DNA of 56,074 nucleotides from Octopus bimaculoides (GCF_001194135.2 NC_068986.1:111982697-112038770), one strand, 5' to 3'; counted from the first letter of the stretch, positions 5,921-47,902 are shown. The notes: generated from the letters alone by a model not told the origin. A program made the numbers and translations.

Positions 5921-6139
5921 CCATACACAATAGAATATATATAGATACACACACACACACGCGCGCGCACACATATATGCATACATACAATCTCAAAAAT
6001 GTGCACACACTTACATACACATACATACACCTTTAGTTTATTAAAATTAATTATTTCGGTTGCACATTTGCAATGAGGCATTCGTAAATACATGTTTTCC
6101 GCGAGTTTTATTGTATGTGCGCAAGCGTATTATTCTCTG

Positions 6140-7218: not shown

Positions 7219-8284
7219 ATGTACGAAATCGAGGTTTATCTCGACCTAGAGGAATGTGTTAAGAATATAAAAAGATTCACAACATACATTACGAAACGGA
7301 GAGTATATGCCACTGTGGAGGTGCGCTTCACAACATAGGAGGAAGCAATAAAGCACACCACAGAGGCAATAAGGACAGAGGAATGGGTGCTCTTGCCTTC
7401 GTACTGCGGCAAGAGAGTGGATACGGTGCCACCCGAATTGAAAGAAGAATGTCTGAGGACAGCCATAGTATATAAAATGAAAGACGGAAAGATTCTAAAG
7501 GCTACAAGGACCCAGAAGGTGAACTACTGGGGGTTTGGTATCGAATTAACGATTCAGACAACAACGGAGGACTTGAATAGTGTGGTGGATGATATTGTGC
7601 TGCCAGATGTGAGGCTGAGATTTATTGTGGAGGGTAAGCCGCCAGTATGTTTCTCATGTGGAGAAAGGGGCCACATGAAGGCACGGTGCACCCAAAGAAA
7701 GCCACAAACAGAACAGGAGGAGAGACATGAGAGTGTGGACCATGTAGCACAGGACAAGGCAACAGAAAAAGAAACGGAGAATGGATTCACTATGGTTAAA
7801 AAGAAAAGAATGAGGAGCGGAAAAAGAAGAGAGAAGAGGTGAGAAAAGAAACTGTGAAGGAGGTCAGTGGGAAGGAAAAAGAAAGGAAAAAGAAAGTGGA
7901 GTTACCAGTGAAGAAAGTGTGGGAAACCCAACTGTATGAAGGTGAGATGGAGAGACTATTTATGGAGGAAGAAATGAGAGAACCAAAAGTCCAAGAGAAC
8001 AGAAAGATACGAGGAGGAGATTAAGTGTGGTATTATGTGACGTACCCCAAAATGTTGAAATAGAGAAAAAGATAATCAAGTTTCATCCAATAGCAAGAGT
8101 GGAGATGCCTTCATACGTCTACGCGGAGGATATGAATGCAATATTGATTGAAGAGGAAAACTACAGAAAGTTGAAAGAGATGTGTGGAGATAGTATTGAC
8201 CCACCAGGAGTGGAGGTGAAATTTAAACAGTTGCCACAACTGGTGGATTTGAGAGATATCGAACCACTAATGAAGTTCTACTAA
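7219..8284 (+). pseudogene. Disabled non-LTR retrotransposon ORF1 (gag-like CCHC zinc-knuckle protein)
   Basis: ATG at 7219 is in frame with track ORF 7387-7842 apart from one TAG (7336-7338); CFSCGERGHMKARC is CX2CX4HX4C; Lys/Glu-rich continuation in shifted frames (7839-8024, 8027-8284). Confidence 0.8.
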
Positions 8285-9159: not shown

Positions 9160-9945
9160 TAAAAGATTTTCGAAACAAATTTTCGTACAGTAACGAAATT
9201 GTAGAATTACTTAAGTACCAGACAAAATGTGATCGGATTTTCCGCTTATTAGCCCTTATTGTAAAACTGCATTTCCCTCCCAGCCGAAAGAAGGCAGAGT
9301 GGCGATCCTTACAATGGACTCGGCTGATAAGCGGATCCGTCCTACATGTGACCACAGATGTTCGACAAACTACCACATGTCAGTAATGCACGGACAGAGG
9401 ACGAGATCATTCAGGATGGCATCAACCCCCTGCGCACACCTCAGACAGGTCCGTCTGACAACACTTCTGTGTCTGTAGAGCTAATCTTGAACAGGCAGAC
9501 CTCCCCAGTAGCACTCCCAGACCAAGGAATTCTGGCAGATGTCCGTAGGTCCTAGCCCGAATGTCCTTCAGAAAAGACCAATTAGTTGATCACTCTTGAC
9601 ACTTAGAGTTTCCCCGAGTACGTCATAGCTCTTTCCCTCCACTAATCCTCTATAGAACACCATGGTGGAACTTTCACTGACCTCATTGCCCGACTGACAG
9701 AAGGTCGTAAGCGCTTGCCGACTCGTCAGGTGCAAAGCACCCTTTTTTGGTGTGCACTTGACAAAGGACTGCAGTTTCATCATTGAAACGAGCTGCAGAA
9801 AGTCACTTGTGACGAACGGCGACCACACCTGCTTAAGAAAACACTGGAGACATCACAATCTCAGCCACAGCATGCCTAGTAAGCGTCTGACGAGCGGAAC
9901 ACGTCCATTCCATAGAAAGTTGAAGTGCCAAAATCGAGATCCCTG
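9160..9945 (-). mobile_element. L1/Tx1-clade LINE ORF2, post-RT C-terminal fragment (pseudogenised)
   Basis: Minus-strand translation gives FLWNGRVPLVRR, WSPFV, FYRGLVEG, SLVWECYWGGLPV and a degenerate zinc finger CLRCAQGVDAILNDLVLCP, with several stops. Confidence 0.8.
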
Positions 9946-9954
9946 ATTATCTAT

Positions 9955-10125
9955 AAAATGCTGAGTTTCATTTAGCTTCCGGCCATTTATGCTCTCATTT
10001 CAAAAACAGCGGAGGTCAACGTTGTCGTCCATAATTCTTGAGTCGATAAAATCAAGTACCAGTGAAGTACTGGAACTAATTTAATCTGCTATCACTCTCT
10101 TACCTTAAAATTTGTGGTGTTGTGT
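9955..10125 (+). mobile_element. Degenerate SINE family A
   Basis: gaggtcaacgttgtc...gagtcgataaaatcaagtaccagtgaagtactgg...aaaatttgtggt. Confidence 0.6.
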
Positions 10126-28140: not shown

Positions 28141-28494
28141 TGTTGCATTAGTTTGGCGCAGAGGCGTGACGTGTTGACGGAAACCACAAGAACGGGGTTC
28201 TCGTAGGTCATGGTTTGCATTCAGCGATTGAAATAAGGAGTAATCCAGCCCGAACTGTTAATCAAATTCGTTGATGAATCACGTCGAAAGATGGGATGTT
28301 GATTATGATGATGTTAAAGATGCTGATACATACACACACACATGTANNNNNNNNNNNNNNNNNNNNNNNNNNNNNNNNNNNNNNNNNNNNNNNNNNNNNN
28401 NNNNNNNNNNNNNNNNNNNNNNNNNNNNNNNNNNNNNNNNNNNNNNNNNNNNNNNNNNNNNNNNNNNNNNNNNNNNNNNNNNNNCAAACAAGAC

Positions 28495-28612
28495 GAAAAC
28501 AGGTATAATAGTTTATCGCTCGGGAAGGAGAGATACTCTTTTATGTTTCGAGCCTACGCTTTTCAACAGGAAAGAACACAAGAAAATAAGCAGAGAGAGA
28601 ATAAAAAATGTT
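28495..28612 (-). mobile_element. Short repeat family F with degenerate hammerhead-like motif
   Basis: Minus strand CTTT-c-CTGTTGA-a-aAGC-gtag-GCTC-GAAAC-aTA-AAAG (28538-28574). Confidence 0.65.
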
Positions 28613-28657
28613 TTCGGTTCTATATTTAAGAGATGAGGAATGATGTACATTATTTAC

Positions 28658-28906
28658 GGGCACATGGTGTAGTGGTTAAGAGCGCAGGCTACTAACTCCA
28701 AGATTCCGAGTTCGATTCTAGGCAGTGACCTGAATAATAATAATAATAACAACAACAACATCCCGAAATACCTTAAGAATGAGAACCCAGGTTCGAAATT
28801 TTCCCAAGATACCTGATGAAGGCTGGATGGTATATCAACCGAAACGTTGTGTTAACAACAAACAAGATGAGGGCAACTAAATATTGTAAATAATGTAAAT
28901 AATGTA
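28658..28906 (+). mobile_element. tRNA-headed SINE-like element carrying a hammerhead ribozyme
   Basis: tRNA-like head GGGCACA...GTGACC with A box TGGTGTAGTGG (28665-28675) and B box GAGTTCGATTC (28708-28718); (AAT)n/(AAC)n spacer; hammerhead at 28808-28853; (GTAAATAAT)n end. Confidence 0.8.
28808..28853 (+). ncRNA. Type I hammerhead ribozyme motif (palindromic, dimer-type helix III)
   Basis: Helix I GATAC/GTGTT; core CTGATGA (28813-28819); extra A; helix II 28821-28840 closed GG/CC; GAAA (28841-28844); helix III ACGT palindrome; GUU triplet with predicted cleavage after 28848. Confidence 0.75.
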
Positions 28907-30058
28907 AAAAAGTTTTACTGGCCAGCGGTCAATCATGGCGTTTATATGTGTGTGTGTAGGAGTGTGTGTGTGTGTGTGTGTTTGTGTGCGAGTGTGTGTG
29001 TGTGCGTGCGTGTGTGTGTGTGAGAAATGGATAACAAAACAATTAGACAATTATACATTCAATTCTAGTTAAATATTTTATACAAACAAATGACACATCT
29101 GATAAATTACAGCTGTTTACGCTTCCTTAATAAAACGGAGTTTTACAAGAATAATCTTATCCGTTTAATATGTAATGCTGCCTCATCAGATCCATATATC
29201 ACATTTAATATTTCACGGAAAATTTCAATTAAAATTATTTATAGCTAAAATTATTTATGACAAAAAACGCTTCTTTAGAGCGAGCCTAATCATTAATAAG
29301 TAAATAATCTCACTGAAATTACGTAAATTCCTAAATTTAAATCGATAAATATTCAGTTCTACAACCGATTTTATTGCACAATACCCACATTCATATATGC
29401 ATATTTATATATACTTATGAAAACACATGTACATTTATCATTTATGTATACATACATACATACATACACACACGTACGTATACACACAGGCATATTCACA
29501 CACACAAGTTTATTTATTCATATATACATATATCTATATTTTTTACAATATGCATACATATAAAATTCATACACACATGTATCTATAGAATATTTCATAT
29601 ATTAATTCAAATCTAAATAAAAAAAGAATTATATCTAAATAAAAGGGTTTATAGTATGAATTCGACTTAAATTCTATTAGAATACAGGGGAGATAATTAT
29701 TTTTCCATTTATAGAAAGTAAACAAAAGACCAAACAAACTCGATACGGTCAACGAGAAAAACATTCAAATTTATACATAAAACAAAAACAAGGAAACAAA
29801 ATATCCAGCATACGAACAACGAGCGAAAAAAAAAAAACTTAAGATACATACACCATATTTTCGTATACACCGCATTATTCATTCACTCACATACGTATAT
29901 TTATCGATGCATATAAACAAAACGAAAAACGAAACCGACTATATACAGACAGAAAAATAAATTTGATACATACATCAAAACCAAAATGATACCAATATAA
30001 AACAATTTATTGTTTTATTTTCCATCTACCACTGACACTAAAATATATATACATATAC

Positions 30059-30857: not shown

Positions 30858-31049
30858 TCCCATTCATATATACACATATACACACACGGTCTTACATACA
30901 TACACATACATATCAATGGACAGCTATAGCTTATCACAGCTACGCATATATACCTACATGAATATATACATACACAAATACACTTATAATTACACATGCA
31001 AAACTCGCTGAAAAATTAGCGTCACAATCCTTTTACACAATCCTTTTAC

Positions 31050-31225
31050 ACAATACGTTTCTCTCTATTTATATTTCTGTGTTCCTTTCTGTTGAAGTGC
31101 ATAGGCTCGAAACGTAAAATACTTTCTCACTTTCCGAGCGTCAAACTAATACAACTGTTTGTTGTTTACCCGTGTTCGTCTTTTGTTTTTTTTTTTCGTT
31201 TTTTTTTTGTAAATTCCAACTATAT
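31050..31225 (+). mobile_element. Short repeat family F with hammerhead-like motif
   Basis: cTTT-CTGTTGA-A-GtGC-atag-GCTC-GAAAC-GTA-AAA (31085-31119), then actttctcactttccgagcgtcaaactaatac shared with the other two copies. Confidence 0.7.
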
Positions 31226-32504: not shown

Positions 32505-35062
32505 AAAAGAAAATATATAACTTATTGAATATAATAATAATAATTTCATCTCTTTTACCGCGCATATGTGTATGCCGATATATTTCTCATCTCATCTGTT
32601 GTCTGACTTCTATTTCAATAACGTTGTGACAGTGTATGTATATGCATATACACATCTCTTGGAGTTTGTATATCATGAAGAATATATGTGTTTGTGTTAT
32701 TAAACATTAGACAGTGGCTTTACCTTCAGATATCTGATATGAATAACAGCGGCAATATAAAAGCAAGCTTCACTTTAATTAGTAACTGTATCTAAGTTTT
32801 GATACCCACTGTGAATCGCCTCTCCCTAGCAATAAAAACTTTAATGATACTCTAAAATATAATTTTGAAGCTATATTTCTTGAAATGTATCTCTAAAAAT
32901 AGAAATAAAATAAATAAATAAAAACACCCCGGTGAAATATTGTCGAATATCAAAGAATTTCTTTCCGCATTTCATTTGGAGTTTTCATTTCTTTAAGCCA
33001 TCGTCTTAATTTAACAACGTTTACCAGTTGCGTCTCGGTGTTAATAAACGTCACGGAAAGCTCTTAGTATGGATAATTTATCGACAATTAAACTCCTGCC
33101 TCTGACAATAAAATCGCTCGCTCTATCATATCTTAACATTAAGATTTCGTATTCGTGTTGAGAATATCACCGAACTGCCATTACTATCCAGTAGAGCTAA
33201 TGGCTTCAGCTTTAATATTTAATCTTATCGAGACTGAATTCTATAACAAACTCACGCATGTTTGTCTCATAAGAATGATAACTATTTTCAAAACTTCGAA
33301 AGGAATGTCCATCCGCTAAGATGATTTCTTAATTGATTACGGCAGGTATTATCTGTGATGAGACAGCGGTTCCATGTTAATGGCAAAGGAAGTAGTTTAA
33401 AGCATATTATAAACAGAATAATCCGTTTAGGAGACTAAATCTCTCGCAAATAATCGAAATAACGGTGGTGCGATAAAGGTATACGTATACATCCATGCGT
33501 ACATCTACATAAACATACCTGCCTGCATATGCATGCGTATATAAGTTCATACTTATATTCATAAACATACACACCACACATACACGCATGCACATATACA
33601 TATATTAGTAAATATATATGTATAACTATACCCCAATCTCATATATATATTTCTCTCTTGCGTTTATGCTTCACATACGTAACTACACTTGAAAAGAAAT
33701 TGAATTATGTTCTGTGTGCGTAGATTACGTTGTACTCTTCAAGGAGAGACACATTGCGATAAAATACCCCAGAAATTTTCAATTGCCAAGATGAAAGTTA
33801 CATTCATATACCTTTTCTTTAACAGGGCGTTTAAAGATCACAATAGATCTTTACTTCGAAAATGAATCCACCTTCACGTTGTTCATTAGAATCCATTGAA
33901 ATGTAACATTTTGAACTTAGACGGTGAGTTGAAACCGCGGCAAATAATGAACCTTCATTTCTCATTCTGTTTGTAGCTAATTTCCCAATAATTCGTGTAT
34001 CATCTTTATCAAGAAACAAGAGGAGAACAAAAAATAAACAAAAACGCGTGTGGTTAAATAAAGACTTAAAGTGTTTGCCAAATTTAAAACAAAAAAAGGA
34101 CTGTCAGGCGTGGAACGCCTTTTGAATCTATATTTACGTGGCCAAGTTTCAAATATAACGAAAGCACTGAGATTTTAGAAATTAGCAAGATGCTAAGTGG
34201 TCTTCTTTGTGATAGCTTAATAACATGTTACACAAAGCCAGCCTGTTTCCTACAAAGGTCACCTTACTCAATTAAAACTTGCACCAGGAAGTGCTGAGAC
34301 TGGTGTATTCTATATCTGAAACAGGCTGATGTTATGGTTATTTGAAGAAAGACTTTGGGCAGTGTCCCCTCGTTCAGGACCAAGTTGTGAATCAATCAAC
34401 CACAGCAACAACAAGAGGAATATCAGCGACAGTAATAATAGTATTCAGTTTCGTTGCTCGTATTGTTGTTGTTGTTGTTGTTATAGTAGCGGCATCGGTG
34501 GTGGTAATGGTTGGGCTTGAGGTTTAGCCTGAAATCGCCTTTAATCAAGCAGATATAATTGCAAAGATACTTCAGTGAAGCCCCTCCCGGATATTTGTTC
34601 CAGCCACACCTGGACAAGCGACTATATCAATTATTGCGCGGTTTTGTGAGCATCATGTTGTGGCTTATAGAACATACGGTTGCTATCTTTCATACCTTCA
34701 CTGATTCTCGTGTAGTGTCCCCGTAAAATTGTTAATGTATTACTTGTTTCAAAATTTTCCAGCGTCTACATAGATACAACAGAATAGGTATGGACCAATA
34801 CTCGTTCGCCCATTCTAATACGTGTCTTAAAAGTAAGGCTTGTTATACATTGAACGATATTCTCAAGACTCGTGTAATTTACCATGGAGCTGAACGTTTC
34901 AATATAGTTCTACACATAAAACTATGCATATACTCTTTTATTCTTTTGCTTTTACTTATTTCAGTCATTTGAATGCGGCCAACACTAGTGGTCAAAATGA
35001 TGGTGGGTACAAACACAGAAAAAAAAAAGCACACACACACAAACGCACACACATACACACAC

Positions 35063-35225
35063 ATATACGACGGGCTTCTTTCAGTTTCTATCTACCAAAT
35101 CCACTCTCAAAGTTTTGGTTGGCCCGAAGCTATAGTAGAAGCCATTAGCCCAAGGTTCCACGCATTGGGACTGAACCCGGAACTATGTGACTGGAAAGCA
35201 AGCTTCTTACCATAGAGCCATTCTT
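35063..35225 (-). mobile_element. tRNA-derived SINE family B
   Basis: Reverse complement of the 12519-12685 family; B-box-like gggttcagtccc. Confidence 0.8.
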
Positions 35226-37638: not shown

Positions 37639-38022
37639 GTGCTAAAAGATGGCGCGCTTGGAAAACTAACCAGCACTCGCTTATGCATGAAGCGACACAA
37701 ATTCAAAGTTAAATCTAACTTTACCTGTGCCTCAGAAAATCTTATTTATGTAATAAAAAGCTCGGGCTGCCACGAGAACTACATAGGGTCCACAGGATTA
37801 TCGCTCAGACGTAGATGCACTCTGCACCGCCAGCAGATTGCACACCCAGAATACCGAATGATAACTTGTAGTTATCATATTGAGAAATGCGCAAAACAAA
37901 TGCTACCACAATTTATAATCTTTCCTTTTTATCAATGTGCCATTAAAACACCAACACAGATTAGATTAAATAAGGAAACCTTTTTCATTCAAAAATACAA
38001 TCCCAAACTTAACCATTGCTAA
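37639..38022 (+). pseudogene. Penelope-like element GIY-YIG endonuclease C-terminus (5'-truncated)
   Basis: NLIYVIKSSGCHENYIGSTG (GIY-YIG), RCTLH and terminal ETFFIQKYNPKLN; no RT domain upstream. Confidence 0.9.
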
Positions 38023-39458: not shown

Positions 39459-40352
39459 TAAGTTTGTCAAGAAAGTTCTTGCGGAATTTTAAATTTTGGT
39501 TTTCAATGATGTATTTTCAACTTAATTTTCGTTAAATTACTTTGACTTTATATATCGTTTTAAAACCCGTTTTCCGCCCTATCTAATCGTGTTACTCTTT
39601 TTATTTTTGAATAATTAGTTCATTTTTCCCGAATGTTGAATACAACATGGACAGAACGCAAATTCGCACAATTTTCTTATTCCAGTCCAAGCTAAGCCGA
39701 AAGCTGCTGAGACAGTGCACGATATGAACGATGCGTTTGGCCGAGGAACCACTAATGAACGTACAGCACAATGGTGGTTCAAGAAATTTCGTAGCGGTGA
39801 CGAGAGTCTTGAAGATGATAAGCGAAGTGGTCGGCCATCGGATGTCGACAACGATCAACTAAGAGCCTTCTGAATTAGACGTAACATATACGACAATTTC
39901 CACCCACTTGAAAGAGATTTGAAAAACAAAAGTACTTGAGAAATGGGTGCCGCACGAATTGAACGAAAGCAAATAAAAAAAACCCCCAAAAAAACGACGT
40001 TTTGAAGTGTCGTCTTCCCTTATTTTACGCAACAAGAACGACCCGTTTCTTGACCGGATTGTGACTTGCAATGAAAAGTGGATTATTTACGACAACCGGC
40101 GATGCTCAGCTGCTCAGTGGTTGGACGCCGACGAAGCTCCAAGGCACTTCACGAAGCCAAAGTTGCGCTAAAACAAGGTCATGGTGACTGTTTGGTGGTC
40201 TGCCGCCGGTCTCATCCATCTCACCTTTTTAGATCAAGGCAAAACCATTAGGGCGGAGAAATACTGTCATCAAACGGATGAAATGCATAAGAAACTCCGA
40301 CAACAGCAACCAGCATAGGTCAATACAAAAAGGACCATTTCTTCTCCACGAA
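39459..40352 (+). mobile_element. Mariner transposon remnant (Hsmar1-like), 3'-truncated and internally deleted
   Basis: TA then TIR-like taagtttgtcaagaaagttcttgcgg; ATG at 39647; motifs WFKKFRSGDESLEDDKRSGRP, WVPHEL, RIVTCNEKW, VMVTVWWS; breaks off at GPFLLH before DNARPH. Confidence 0.92.
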
Positions 40353-45930: not shown

Positions 45931-46499
45931 TTACTGGGCCGAACGGCACGAAAATGTAATACTGGCTCTTAGAGAATTGCCTTGTTTTCGTTGAACATCA
46001 TTGTTTGTATAAATTGTTAGGCTTCAATCATGTAATAATAGGGTAGTTAAAGTGTGCATATGTGTTATATATGTATATATATATATGTCTATGCGTGTAT
46101 GATTCTTTCTGTATGTGTGCGTCTATGCTACTTCTGTGTATGAGCATGTGTGTGTGTGTGTGTAAATGTGATAACTACAGCACAAAATAGAAGCATATAT
46201 TACGCACATATACTCACTTCACCACACATACACACCACGGATACATACACAAATTCTGTCACACACTCACACACACCGAATACAGTTATAGAACCAAACA
46301 ATGCGTAGGCACCCTCATATACGTACACAAGCAGAAACACACATGGACTACAAAAACTCAAGATATTATATGTAATAATGAACTTTACAAATACACATTT
46401 TGTGTTGTTGCTTTATTATTTTTTTAAAAATAAATAAGCTATTTGTTGTTATTACCGCAAATGTTCGTTGTCGCTCCTGTAATAATGATGTTAACAACA

Positions 46500-46611
46500 G
46501 CAACAAAATCTACAGTAACAACTGCATCAACAACAACGATGACGACGATGATGAAGGAGAGGAGGTTGATGTTGAAGACGACCACGGCGAAAACAACAAT
46601 AGCAACAACAA

Positions 46612-46673
<62 letters not shown>

Positions 46674-46890
46674 TTACTATAATCATCATCGTCATCATCA
46701 TCATCATCATCATCATCAACATCGTCATCATCATCATCATCATCATCACCATCATCATCATCATCTTCATCATCATCATCATCATCGTCATCATCTTCAT
46801 CATCATCATCATCGTCGTCATCATCATCATCATCATCATCATCGTCATCATCACTATCATCATCATCATCATCACCATCATCATCACCAC

Positions 46891-46921
<31 letters not shown>

Positions 46922-46948
46922 TTCATCAACATCGTCATCATCATCATC

Positions 46949-46980
<32 letters not shown>

Positions 46981-47640
46981 CATCATCATCACCATCATCA
47001 TCATCATCTTCATCATCATCATCATCATCATCAACATCGTCATCATCATCATCATTATCATTATCATCATCATCATCATCACCATCACCATCATCACCAT
47101 CATCATCATCATCTTCATCATCATCATTATTATTATTATTAGTGCTGATGCTGGCCGTTCTTTCGATGGATATAGACATCATCAACATTTACACAAGCAA
47201 CGCGCCACCTCGACAGCTGCCCCATCATCACGTCAGGCGAGGCATCACCGCCACCACCACCAACATCGTTACCGCATTTATCATCACCTTAATCATCATC
47301 ATGGTCATCATCAACGTCGTAATGATCGTCGTCGTTGTCGTCGTCATCATTATCATCATTATCGTCATCTTCATCATTATTGATTTGCTCATCACTCATT
47401 CTGTTTCAGTTATCTACGTTACCATTGACAACGCTACTGCTGCTGCTATTGCATCTATTGCTGCTGCTGCTGCTACTGCTGCTGCTGCTTCTGTATATTA
47501 TTTAAATTTACATAAATGCGATTACAGTACCACTACCTTAGCCACCACCATTAATCTCATCCTCACCACCACCACCACCACCATCAGCAACAAAAACAAC
47601 ACCAACACTAGCACCGCTACTACACCACTACATAATAGTA

Positions 47641-47687
<47 letters not shown>

Positions 47688-47690
47688 AGA
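46500..47690. repeat. Long compound trinucleotide region: (AAC), (ATT), about 450 bp of (CAT), (CAC), (GCT), (GAT)
   Basis: Directly visible; explains the poly-I, poly-D and poly-M ORFs in the track. Confidence 0.95.
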
Positions 47691-47902
47691 AATGCTTAAA
47701 ATGCTACCAAGCCATCGACGGTATTTTGTTGCGTTGTTTTTCCCCCATGGCAGTGGTTTAACTGTCATTAAATTTAATAGAGATGGCGAGTTAAAAAGCA
47801 GAAGAATGATATAAAGTAGATGGGAGAGGAAAAAGAAGAGAATAAAAGACCAACAACGACAACAGCGGAATTAAAAGAAAAAGCAAAGTAAAATATATAT
47901 GG

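What the first reader, a model, noticed from the sequence alone, without database searches (positions are those of the whole stretch)
28658..28906. tRNA-headed SINE-like element fused to a near-canonical hammerhead ribozyme
Seen: an internal Pol III promoter (A box 28665-28675, B box 28708-28718), an (AAT)n/(AAC)n spacer, then a complete type I hammerhead layout: helix I GATAC/GTGTT, CUGAUGA, an extra A, helix II (GG/CC closing, one C-A mismatch), GAAA, a loopless ACGU palindromic helix III and a GUU site (cleavage after 28848). Established: palindromic helix III type I hammerheads occur in Penelope-like element terminal repeats and cleave as dimers; an extra A after A9 is a tolerated natural core variant; the schistosome Sm-alpha repeat is a precedent for a Pol III repeat with a hammerhead. 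Inference: a Pol III-transcribed, self-processing element (SINE/retrozyme hybrid) that may borrow Penelope RT/EN. Caveat: this copy has TTTT at 28799-28802 that could terminate Pol III just before the ribozyme, and a second B-box-like GGTTCGAAA lies at 28790-28798.
Basis: partly seen in the sequence, partly recalled or inferred. Interest (0 to 1): 0.88.

Follow-up and report, generated by a model that had tools for sequence, protein, structure and literature searches.

The report
Octopus SINE carrying a minimal hammerhead motif
This is one copy of a short mobile DNA element of octopuses that joins a tRNA-like promoter head to a module with the layout of a Penelope-type minimal hammerhead ribozyme; the sequence features are real, but nothing yet shows that the RNA cuts itself.

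Summary
The paired A and B boxes and the minimal hammerhead (min-HHR) layout are each far rarer than chance.

- **A repeat family, not a one-off.** Octopus sinensis and O. vulgaris carry a full copy at an unlinked locus with the same order: head, (AAT/AAC)n, body, tail.
- **Pattern of differences.** In that copy the window's C-A mismatch in helix II is C-G, one helix I U-G is C-G, and the only core change is at the tolerated position N7. Its minimum-energy fold is exactly helices I and II.
- **New findings.** The element is longer than reported. An inverted 41-nt copy of its own 3' end (28617-28657) abuts the head, and a 12-13-nt direct repeat flanks the whole insertion. The O. sinensis full copy also abuts an inverted partial copy. 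This arrangement is typical of Penelope-like elements (PLEs).
- **Unsupported.** There is no evidence for self-cleavage or for a retrozyme-like cycle. No Rfam hammerhead or tRNA model matches. A T4 run precedes the ribozyme in both full copies. A third copy has lost the CUGANGA box. Only two full independent copies were available, so covariation cannot be tested.

Verdict: a real tRNA-like-headed SINE with a PLE-type hammerhead module. Its mobilisation by PLE enzymes is plausible but not shown.

The parts
28602..28614 (.). Left copy of the putative target-site duplication, TAAAAAATGTTTT
   Evidence: Local alignment of the two flanks gives 12 of 13 matches with one gap to 28905-28916. It lies 2 nt outside the inverted fragment. 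The sequence is AT-rich, so the weight is moderate.
28617..28657 (-). Inverted 41-nt fragment of the element's own 3' end in its long-tail form: GTAAATAATGTACATCATTCCTCATCTCTTAAATATAGAAC on the minus strand. It abuts the 5' end of the head.
   Evidence: It matches the 3' end of the O. sinensis full copy (L003 10111-10151) at 35 of 41 positions. The 25-nt extension matches at 24 of 25, E about 2e-6 to 1e-5 over about 370 kb searched.
28658..28732 (+). tRNA-like head with Pol III internal promoter boxes (A box 28665-28675, B box 28708-28718)
   Evidence: The A plus B box pattern occurs once in the window against 0.007 expected. The head is 89% identical to that of the O. sinensis copy. ARAGORN and the Rfam tRNA model do not recognise it.
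28733..28759 (+). Internal microsatellite (AAT)5(AAC)4
   Evidence: Read directly. The same position holds a longer (AAC/AAT)n in L003a and (ATG/AAT)n in L003b.
28760..28807 (+). 5' part of the body. It includes the block GAATGAGAACCCAGGTTCGAAATTT, which is invariant in the three copies in hand, the B-box-like GGTTCGAAA (28790-28798) and the T4 run (28799-28802).
   Evidence: Three-copy alignment. The T4 run is present in both full copies and is T3 in the deletion copy.
28808..28853 (+). Minimal type I hammerhead layout. Helix I is 28808-12 paired with 28849-53. The CUGAUGA box is 28813-19 and the unpaired A is 28820. Helix II is 28821-26 paired with 28835-40 (C23-A38 unpaired), with loop 28827-34. 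GAAA is 28841-44 and the ACGU palindrome is 28844-47. The predicted cleavage site is after U17 at 28848.
   Evidence: It is the only descriptor hit in the window, with none in the shuffles or in 59 Mb of random sequence. The same motif sits at the same place in the O. sinensis copy with intact helices. The window copy's minimum-energy fold is not the hammerhead fold.
28854..28882 (+). Linker between the motif and the tail, AACAACAAACAAGATGAGGGCAACTAAAT
   Evidence: It aligns to all three copies.
28883..28904 (+). 3' tail in its short form, ATTGTAAATAATGTAAATAATG (a 9-nt unit TGTAAATAA repeated)
   Evidence: It aligns with the tails of L003a and L003b. It lacks the 25-nt extension seen in L003a and in the inverted fragment.
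28905..28916 (.). Right copy of the putative target-site duplication, TAAAAAAGTTTT
   Evidence: It begins exactly where similarity to the other copies ends.

Best explanation
The window holds one insertion of an octopod SINE family. It spans about 290 nt including the inverted fragment, from 28617 to 28904.

The element is a composite of four parts:
- a tRNA-like head with Pol III A and B boxes;
- an expandable (AAT/AAC)n microsatellite;
[quoted passage not shown] Shown:
- The family exists in at least three octopus genomes with the same module order.
- The hammerhead layout is not a chance match.
- The better-preserved copy folds into helices I and II.
- Both full copies have an inverted partial copy of the same element at their 5' end.

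Inferred:
- The 3' module was captured from a PLE.
- That module lets the Pol III (or read-through Pol II) transcript be copied and inserted by PLE RT and GIY-YIG endonuclease, with priming on both DNA strands producing the inverted fragment and the short and long tails.
- The hammerhead is most likely a passenger of that captured module, active at best weakly and only as a dimer. Efficient cleavage after 28848 would cut the promoter head away from the 3' end that the reverse transcriptase needs.
- The window copy itself is probably a decayed ribozyme, with a C-A mismatch in helix II and two G-U pairs in helix I.
For: - **Family and structure.** The six-frame peptide search hit one O. sinensis protein whose N-terminus is read from a copy. 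Locus L003 holds a full copy at 9836-10151, with the head 89% and the body 85% identical to the window copy. It also holds a body-only copy (5980-6088) and an inverted head fragment (9768-9827). The O. vulgaris ortholog is identical.
- **Motif.** The descriptor hits only the SINE copies in about 370 kb. The five differences between the two motifs fall at N7, loop II (two of them), one U-G to C-G change and one C-A to C-G change, and none falls at an essential core position. The O. sinensis motif's minimum-energy fold equals helices I and II, at -13.0 kcal/mol and 31% of the ensemble. All min-HHR traits listed in PMC4209133 are present.
- **PLE-like insertion.** There is an inverted 3' fragment and a 25-nt optional extension and a flanking direct repeat. 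PMC8557442 and PMC11167929 describe the inverted 5'-truncated copy, the optional 30-40-bp tail and the two RT start sites as PLE signatures.
- **PLEs are present in these genomes.** A GIY-YIG ORF lies at window 37639-38022 and another fragment at L003 46970-47343.
Against: - Only two independent full copies and one partial copy were available. There is no compensatory double change, so covariation is untestable.
- The five substitutions avoiding the core is not statistically significant (my estimate, P about 0.07-0.19).
- No Rfam hammerhead or tRNA match appears at E<=10.
- Fold z-scores are unremarkable.
- The T4 run upstream of the motif is shared by both full copies and could stop Pol III before the ribozyme.
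- One copy has lost the CUGANGA box.
- No sequence similarity was found between the SINE and the 3' flanks of the PLE fragments in hand.
- A tail of short tandem repeats is also typical of LINE partners.
- The direct repeat is AT-rich and imperfect.
- The L003 inverted fragment carries the head and microsatellite but no recognisable body or tail. This does not match a simple 5'-truncated copy.
Confidence: 0.6

Rival explanations
1. It is an ordinary LINE-dependent tRNA-like SINE. The hammerhead-like stretch is a fragment picked up from a PLE or another repeat and has no role. The inverted fragments reflect nested or adjacent independent insertions into a preferred AT-rich target.
For: - The tail consists of short tandem repeats (TGTAAATAA)n, as in many LINE/SINE pairs (my knowledge).
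- No similarity to the available PLE 3' regions was found.
- One copy lacks the CUGANGA box.
- The T4 run lies before the motif.
- The head and the body also occur separately in L003.
Against: - No LINE with a matching tail was seen in about 370 kb.
- Both full copies have an inverted piece of the same family exactly at their 5' end.
- The window insertion appears to be bracketed by one direct repeat.
- The long and short 3' ends match the PLE tail phenomenon (PMC11167929).
Confidence: 0.25
2. It is a self-processing ribozyme element. Pol III transcripts read through the T4 run, pair as dimers through the ACGU palindrome, cleave after GUU, and the products (possibly circular) drive propagation.
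For: - The core is complete, with a palindromic helix III and an unpaired nucleotide after A9.
- The core is kept intact in the second copy, where the only change is at N7.
- Dimeric cleavage of PLE min-HHRs is documented, although it is weak (PMC4209133).
- Schistosome Sm-alpha/Sj-alpha SINE-like elements carry hammerhead ribozymes (PMC2770079).
Against: - There is a single motif per element and no tandem copies, so no unit-length excision or circle is possible.
- Cleavage would separate the promoter head from the 3' end.
- The T4 run is conserved upstream.
- PLE min-HHRs cleave poorly in vitro (PMC4209133). In the one PLE tested in vitro, cleavage was not needed for insertion and no RNA ends were found at the site (PMC11167929).
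- An O. sinensis mRNA model reads straight through the motif.
Confidence: 0.12
3. The hammerhead layout is a chance resemblance within a SINE body and is unrelated to any ribozyme.
For: - No Rfam hit.
- No significant folding signal.
- No covariation.
- Repeat family X in the same window shows that GAAAC-containing, half hammerhead-like strings occur in octopus repeats.
Against: - The descriptor rate is below 1 per 59 Mb of composition-matched sequence.
- Extra traits not needed for a chance core are all present: the unpaired nucleotide, G10.1-C11.1 and the palindromic 15.2/16.2.
- Min-HHRs number in the thousands in several animal genomes surveyed (PMC4209133), so a genuine motif is far more likely a priori than a random one.
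Confidence: 0.05

Closest known systems
Minimal type I hammerheads (min-HHR) of Penelope-like elements (Cervera and de la Pena 2014, PMC4209133)
   Same: Helix I of 5 bp with an open end, and a long helix II closed by G10.1-C11.1. One unpaired nucleotide lies between A9 and G10.1. There is no helix III loop, only the palindrome A-CG-U, so the motif is expected to act only as a dimer. These motifs mostly occur as dispersed single copies.
   Different: Here the motif sits inside a short element with a Pol III-type head, not in the terminal repeat of a PLE. No PLE with a related sequence was found in the DNA available.
Sm-alpha / Sj-alpha SINE-like elements of schistosomes (PMC2770079 and references therein)
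   Same: A high-copy short retroposon that combines a tRNA-derived head with a hammerhead motif.
   Different: The schistosome motif is a canonical type I hammerhead (PMC4209133) and its family matched the Rfam hammerhead motif by BLAST (PMC2770079). The octopus motif is the minimal form, matches no Rfam model, and the element has an internal microsatellite and a 9-nt repeat tail.
Animal non-LTR retrozymes (bioRxiv 10.64898/2026.07.22.740005)
   Same: Non-autonomous sequences with type I hammerheads, proposed to depend on PLE enzymes.
   Different: Retrozymes are tandem arrays with one ribozyme per unit and have been proposed to move by a rolling-circle mechanism. This element is dispersed, has one motif and a Pol III head, and shows no tandem structure.
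tRNA-derived SINEs (SINE2), including the octopus OK/OR families of Ohshima and Okada 1994
   Same: A and B boxes, a length of about 250-300 nt, dispersed copies, a target-site duplication and a modular head-body-tail build.
   Different: The head no longer scores as a tRNA. No LINE-derived tail was identified. Inverted partial copies lie at the 5' end. Any relation to the published OK/OR families could not be checked, because their sequences are not in the tools.

Membership tests
PLE-type minimal type I hammerhead (min-HHR) | Catalytic core C3 U4 G5 A6 N7 G8 A9 ... G12 A13 A14 ... U16.1 H17 | tested here: met
   CTGATGA at 28813-19, GAAA at 28841-44, and U16.1 and U17 at 28847-48. The O. sinensis copy has CTGAAGA, a change at N7 only.
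PLE-type minimal type I hammerhead (min-HHR) | Helix I of 4-5 bp and a long helix II closed by G10.1-C11.1 | tested here: met
   Helix I has 5 pairs, two of them G-U in the window copy. Helix II has 6 positions, one unpaired (C-A) in the window copy and all paired in O. sinensis.
PLE-type minimal type I hammerhead (min-HHR) | Unpaired nucleotide between A9 and G10.1, and palindromic 15.2/16.2 without a loop | tested here: met
   A at 28820 and A-CG-T at 28844-47, in both copies. The criteria are from PMC4209133.
PLE-type minimal type I hammerhead (min-HHR) | Families of copies with covariation or compensatory changes in the helices | tested here: inconclusive
   Only two sequences were available. 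There is one one-sided change (U-G to C-G), one mismatch against a pair, and no double change.
PLE-type minimal type I hammerhead (min-HHR) | Located in or derived from a PLE terminal repeat | tested here: inconclusive
   PLE endonuclease fragments are present in the window and in L003. Their flanks show no similarity to the SINE and no min-HHR. No full octopus PLE was available.
PLE-type minimal type I hammerhead (min-HHR) | Self-cleavage (as a dimer) | not testable with these tools
   This needs in vitro transcription or mapping of RNA ends.
Rfam hammerhead families (curated covariance models) | Score at or near the gathering threshold | tested here: not met
   There was no hammerhead match at the gathering threshold in the window. 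There was also none at E<=10 around either copy. This is expected for a motif without a closed helix III.
tRNA-derived SINE (SINE2) | Internal Pol III promoter (A and B boxes at tRNA-like spacing) | tested here: met
   There is one hit in the window against 0.007 expected, and it is conserved in the O. sinensis copy.
tRNA-derived SINE (SINE2) | Head recognisable as a tRNA (cloverleaf or homology) | tested here: not met
   ARAGORN finds nothing at default or mildly relaxed settings. There is no Rfam tRNA match at E<=10, and the head does not fold as a cloverleaf.
tRNA-derived SINE (SINE2) | Dispersed copies at unlinked loci with defined ends and a target-site duplication | tested here: met
   There are copies in the window and on O. 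sinensis CM016884.1 and its O. vulgaris ortholog. The 5' end is defined by two loci. A 12-13-nt flanking repeat is present in the window. Copy number is low in the sample, with none in about 110 kb of further Octopus DNA.
tRNA-derived SINE (SINE2) | 3' end shared with a partner LINE | tested here: inconclusive
   No matching LINE tail was found in about 370 kb. Whole genomes were not searchable.
Animal non-LTR retrozyme | Tandem units, each with a hammerhead | tested here: not met
   There is a single motif, no second copy within the window, and no tandem unit at either locus.

The most novel reading that the evidence does not exclude
Octopods harbour a Pol III-headed SINE that is mobilised by Penelope-like element RT and GIY-YIG endonuclease rather than by a LINE. 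It would have captured the PLE hammerhead and 3' recognition module. Its insertions would show the PLE hallmarks: an inverted partial copy, an optional tail and microsatellite-like targets. I found no PLE-dependent tRNA-type SINE outside flatworms in the papers searched, so this would be an undescribed example and a compact substrate for studying PLE retrotransposition.
Probability: 0.3. Interest if true: 0.65.

Novelty: new variant of a known kind. Interest (0 to 1): 0.5.

Why it matters
Hammerhead motifs are scattered by the thousand through several animal genomes, mostly as single copies whose carriers and function are unclear. A short element that joins a Pol III promoter to a PLE-type hammerhead and inserts with PLE-like signatures would do three things:
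- It would explain part of that scatter.
- It would extend the SINE/LINE partnership model to Penelope-like elements.
- It would offer a 300-nt substrate for testing what PLE reverse transcriptase recognises and whether the ribozyme matters.

It also has a visible effect on a host gene. One copy supplies the start codon, the first exon and the splice donor of a predicted O. sinensis protein isoform.

If the hammerhead turns out to be inert, this is simply one more SINE family with a captured fragment.

Tried and rejected
- **Rfam.** No hits at the gathering threshold on the whole window. At E<=10 around both copies there were only chance-level hits to unrelated families.
- **ARAGORN.** Nothing on the window or on the heads.
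- **Other copies in the window.** BLAST and repeat searches found none.
- **Public collection scans.** DNA and back-translated peptide patterns were run against the viral, metagenome and prokaryote collections. They gave nothing, or two chance bacterial matches.
- **Sequence strings in the paper library.** None found.
- **PLE endonuclease ORF as a query.** It returned only two marine metagenome proteins on short contigs, which did not help with SINE copies.
- **A second composite pseudo-peptide query, meant to list many octopus genes.** It returned one protein without a contig.
- **Six further loci reached through a gag-like protein family** (five Octopus, one Argonauta hians, about 130 kb in all). 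None held a copy. The last look-up failed.
- **Thermodynamic folding of the window copy and of the whole element.** No signal. The intermolecular helix III cannot be scored with nested-structure energy models.
- **Juxtaposition of two unrelated repeats.** Rejected, because the same order recurs at an unlinked locus.
- **Retrozyme.** Rejected, because there is no tandem structure.
- **Twin priming on a single RNA as the source of the inverted fragment.** Rejected, because the inverted piece duplicates the 3' end that the direct full-length copy also carries.

Full report
**1. The observation**

- A box TGGTGTAGTGG lies at 28665-75 and B box GAGTTCGATTC at 28708-18.
- (AAT)5(AAC)4 lies at 28733-59.
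- A second B-box-like GGTTCGAAA lies at 28790-98, followed by TTTT at 28799-28802.
- The hammerhead layout is GATAC / CTGATGA / A / GGCTGG-ATGGTATA-TCAACC / GAAA / CG / T / T / GTGTT at 28808-28853.
- Helix II has one C-A mismatch. The predicted cleavage site is after 28848.

The bare core pattern is not unusual: CTGATGA..GAAA gives 3 hits against 1.39 expected. I therefore wrote a full minimal-hammerhead descriptor. It requires:
- helix I of at least 4 bp;
- helix II of at least 5 bp, closed by G10.1-C11.1;
- an optional unpaired base after A9;
- a palindromic insert between A15.1 and U16.1;
- H17.

The descriptor finds only this site in the window. It found nothing in 300 shuffled windows and nothing in 59 Mb of composition-matched random sequence on both strands. 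The A box plus B box pair at tRNA spacing occurs once against 0.007 expected.

**2. What the curated tools say**

Rfam gives no family at the gathering threshold anywhere in the window. With permissive E-values around the element it gives no hammerhead and no tRNA. ARAGORN finds no tRNA, even with lowered thresholds on the isolated head, and the head does not fold as a cloverleaf.

The window copy's minimum-energy fold is not the hammerhead fold, and the fold energies are no better than shuffles. So 'tRNA-headed' rests on the promoter boxes, and 'hammerhead' rests on the descriptor. The lack of an Rfam hit is expected for a motif that has no closed helix III.

**3. It is a repeat family**

No second copy exists in the window. 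Scans of the viral, metagenome and prokaryote collections gave nothing real.

Translating the element in six frames and searching the protein collection found one protein. This is Octopus sinensis LOC115224785 isoform X2, whose first 33 residues (MRTQVRNFPKTPEEGWRVYQPKRCVNNKHDEDN) are read from a copy of the element. Through a cluster member I obtained 47 kb of O. sinensis chromosome CM016884.1 as locus L003. It holds three pieces:
- a full copy at 9836-10151, with the same order of head, (AAC/AAT)n, body and tail; the head is 89% and the body about 85% identical to the window copy;
- a body-only copy at 5980-6088 on the other strand;
- an inverted head-plus-microsatellite fragment at 9768-9827.

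The O. vulgaris ortholog (L012) is identical in the element. Five further Octopus loci (about 110 kb) and one Argonauta hians locus held no copy, so the family is not very dense. The window is therefore from an octopod genome. I infer that the species is an Octopus. This rests on these matches, on the abundant octopus SINE at 12518-12690 (my recognition), and on a gag-like ORF whose only significant match is an O. bimaculoides protein.

**4. The motif in the second copy**

The O. sinensis motif is GACAC CTGAAGA A GGCTGG AGGGTGTA TCAGCC GAAACGTT GTGTT. Compared with the window copy it has five differences:
- U7 to A, the one core position that tolerates any base;
- two changes in loop II;
- U-G to C-G in helix I;
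- C-A to C-G in helix II.

No essential core position differs. All 11 pairs form in O. sinensis and 10 of 11 in the window copy. The O. sinensis segment's minimum-energy and centroid structures are exactly helices I and II, at -13.0 kcal/mol and 31% of the ensemble. The z-score is only -0.73.

This pattern is what a constrained ribozyme would show, but with two sequences it is not significant (my estimate, P about 0.07-0.19), and there is no compensatory double change. The third copy has lost about 28 nt, including helix I and the CUGANGA box, so the motif is not kept everywhere.

The window copy, with its mismatch and two G-U pairs, looks like the decayed one.

**5. Fit to known hammerhead classes**

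Cervera and de la Pena 2014 (PMC4209133) define the minimal hammerheads of Penelope-like elements by these traits:
- a short helix I (4-5 bp) with an ill-defined loop;
- a longer helix II;
- the G10.1-C11.1 pair;
- palindromic 15.2/16.2 positions in place of a helix III hairpin.

They report thousands of such motifs per genome, mostly as dispersed single copies, and only weak cleavage in vitro as dimers. Every sequence trait is met here.

Schistosome Sm-alpha/Sj-alpha elements are an established precedent for a tRNA-derived SINE-like element with a hammerhead (PMC2770079).

**6. New structural findings**

The reverse complement of 28617-28657, immediately upstream of the head, is GTAAATAATGTACATCATTCCTCATCTCTTAAATATAGAAC. 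This matches the 3' end of the O. sinensis full copy at 35 of 41 positions. Its last 25 nt match at 24 of 25, with E about 2e-6 to 1e-5. Two things follow:
- The family has a long 3' end. It carries a 25-nt extension that the window's direct copy lacks, since that copy stops at 28904.
- The window insertion consists of an inverted 3'-terminal fragment joined head-to-head to a full-length copy.

The whole is bracketed by TAAAAAATGTTTT (28602-14) and TAAAAAAGTTTT (28905-16). I read these as a target-site duplication from a single insertion event. They are AT-rich and imperfect, so the weight is moderate.

The O. sinensis full copy also abuts an inverted fragment of the family at its 5' end.

Craig et al. 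2021 (PMC8557442) describe exactly these features for PLEs: an inverted 5'-truncated copy next to the upstream end, an optional 30-40-bp tail at one end, and a bias for microsatellite targets. The 2024 in vitro study of an anole PLE (PMC11167929) traces the optional tail to two adjacent reverse-transcription start sites.

Twin priming on one RNA does not explain the window structure, because the inverted piece duplicates the 3' end that the direct full-length copy also carries.

**7. PLEs in these genomes**

The window has a 5'-truncated PLE endonuclease ORF at 37639-38022 (Pfam GIY-YIG). L003 has another fragment at 46970-47343. Neither shows similarity to the SINE in its 3' flank, and neither has a min-HHR by my descriptor. 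The partner is therefore not identified.

**8. Mechanism**

The best-supported reading is a non-autonomous retroposon with a Pol III-type head and a 3' module captured from a PLE, inserted by PLE-type target-primed reverse transcription on both strands.

I consider the hammerhead most likely a passenger of that module, for five reasons:
- Each element has only one motif, so it cannot excise a unit.
- Cleavage after 28848 would separate the promoter head from the 3' end.
- A T4 run lies 6 nt before helix I in both full copies.
- In the anole PLE, ribozyme mutants inserted normally and no RNA ends were seen at the cleavage site (PMC11167929).
- A predicted O. sinensis mRNA isoform reads through the motif.

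The family, the module order, the motif and the inverted fragments are shown. The PLE origin and mobilisation and the role of the ribozyme are inferred.

**9. Verdict**

The element is a real SINE with a genuine PLE-type hammerhead layout, and there is some new evidence for PLE-like insertion. Self-processing and the retrozyme analogy are unsupported.
- Novelty: a variant of known kinds (hammerhead-bearing SINE-like elements and dispersed PLE min-HHRs) in a new lineage. I found no description of it in the searched literature.
- Interest is moderate. The decisive work is a genome-wide census of copies and a cleavage assay.

Noticed in passing
window 37639-38022 (+); L003 46970-47343 (-): There are 5'-truncated Penelope-like element GIY-YIG endonuclease ORFs. 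The closest proteins (54-59% identity) are on Tara/ENA marine metagenome contigs. The L003 copy is followed by repeated TGATGACGTC motifs.
   Followed up: partly
window 31040-31200 (+), 28486-28616 (-), 12290-12380 (-); L003 34467-34575 (-): This is a separate repeat family ('X') with an invariant TAGGCTCGAAAC block. The copy at 31086-31119 has a hammerhead-like layout but with CUGUUGA (A6 replaced by U), and the CUGANGA box is poorly kept among the copies. Its relation to the SINE motif is unclear. The SINE insertion lies directly beside the X copy at 28486-28616.
   Followed up: partly
L003 10002-10110 (O. sinensis CM016884.1): The SINE copy supplies the start codon and the first 33 codons of predicted isoform X2 of LOC115224785. 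The GTAAGT in the SINE tail serves as the 5' splice site, so this is an exonised SINE.
   Followed up: partly
window 12518-12690 (+); 35053-35221 (inverted relative): These are copies of a different, abundant octopus tRNA-like SINE. It has a CORE-like stretch (CTTGGGCAAGTGTCTTCTACTATAGCC) and ends in (TA)n next to an assembly gap.
   Followed up: no
window 7339-7839 and 7946-8281 (+): These are gag-like ORFs with a CCHC zinc knuckle. They are 37% identical to an O. bimaculoides CCHC-domain protein, which has many relatives in O. sinensis, O. vulgaris and Argonauta hians.
   Followed up: partly
window 39640-40318 (+): These are frame-shifted remnants of a Mos1/mariner-type transposase (HTH_48 domain).
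   Followed up: no
window 46400-47700: A long trinucleotide-repeat tract (AAT/ATC-type) gives artificial poly-Ile, poly-Asp and poly-Met reading frames of 200-330 codons on both strands. About 4.3 kb of the window is assembly gaps, usually flanked by (TA)n or (GT)n.
   Followed up: no
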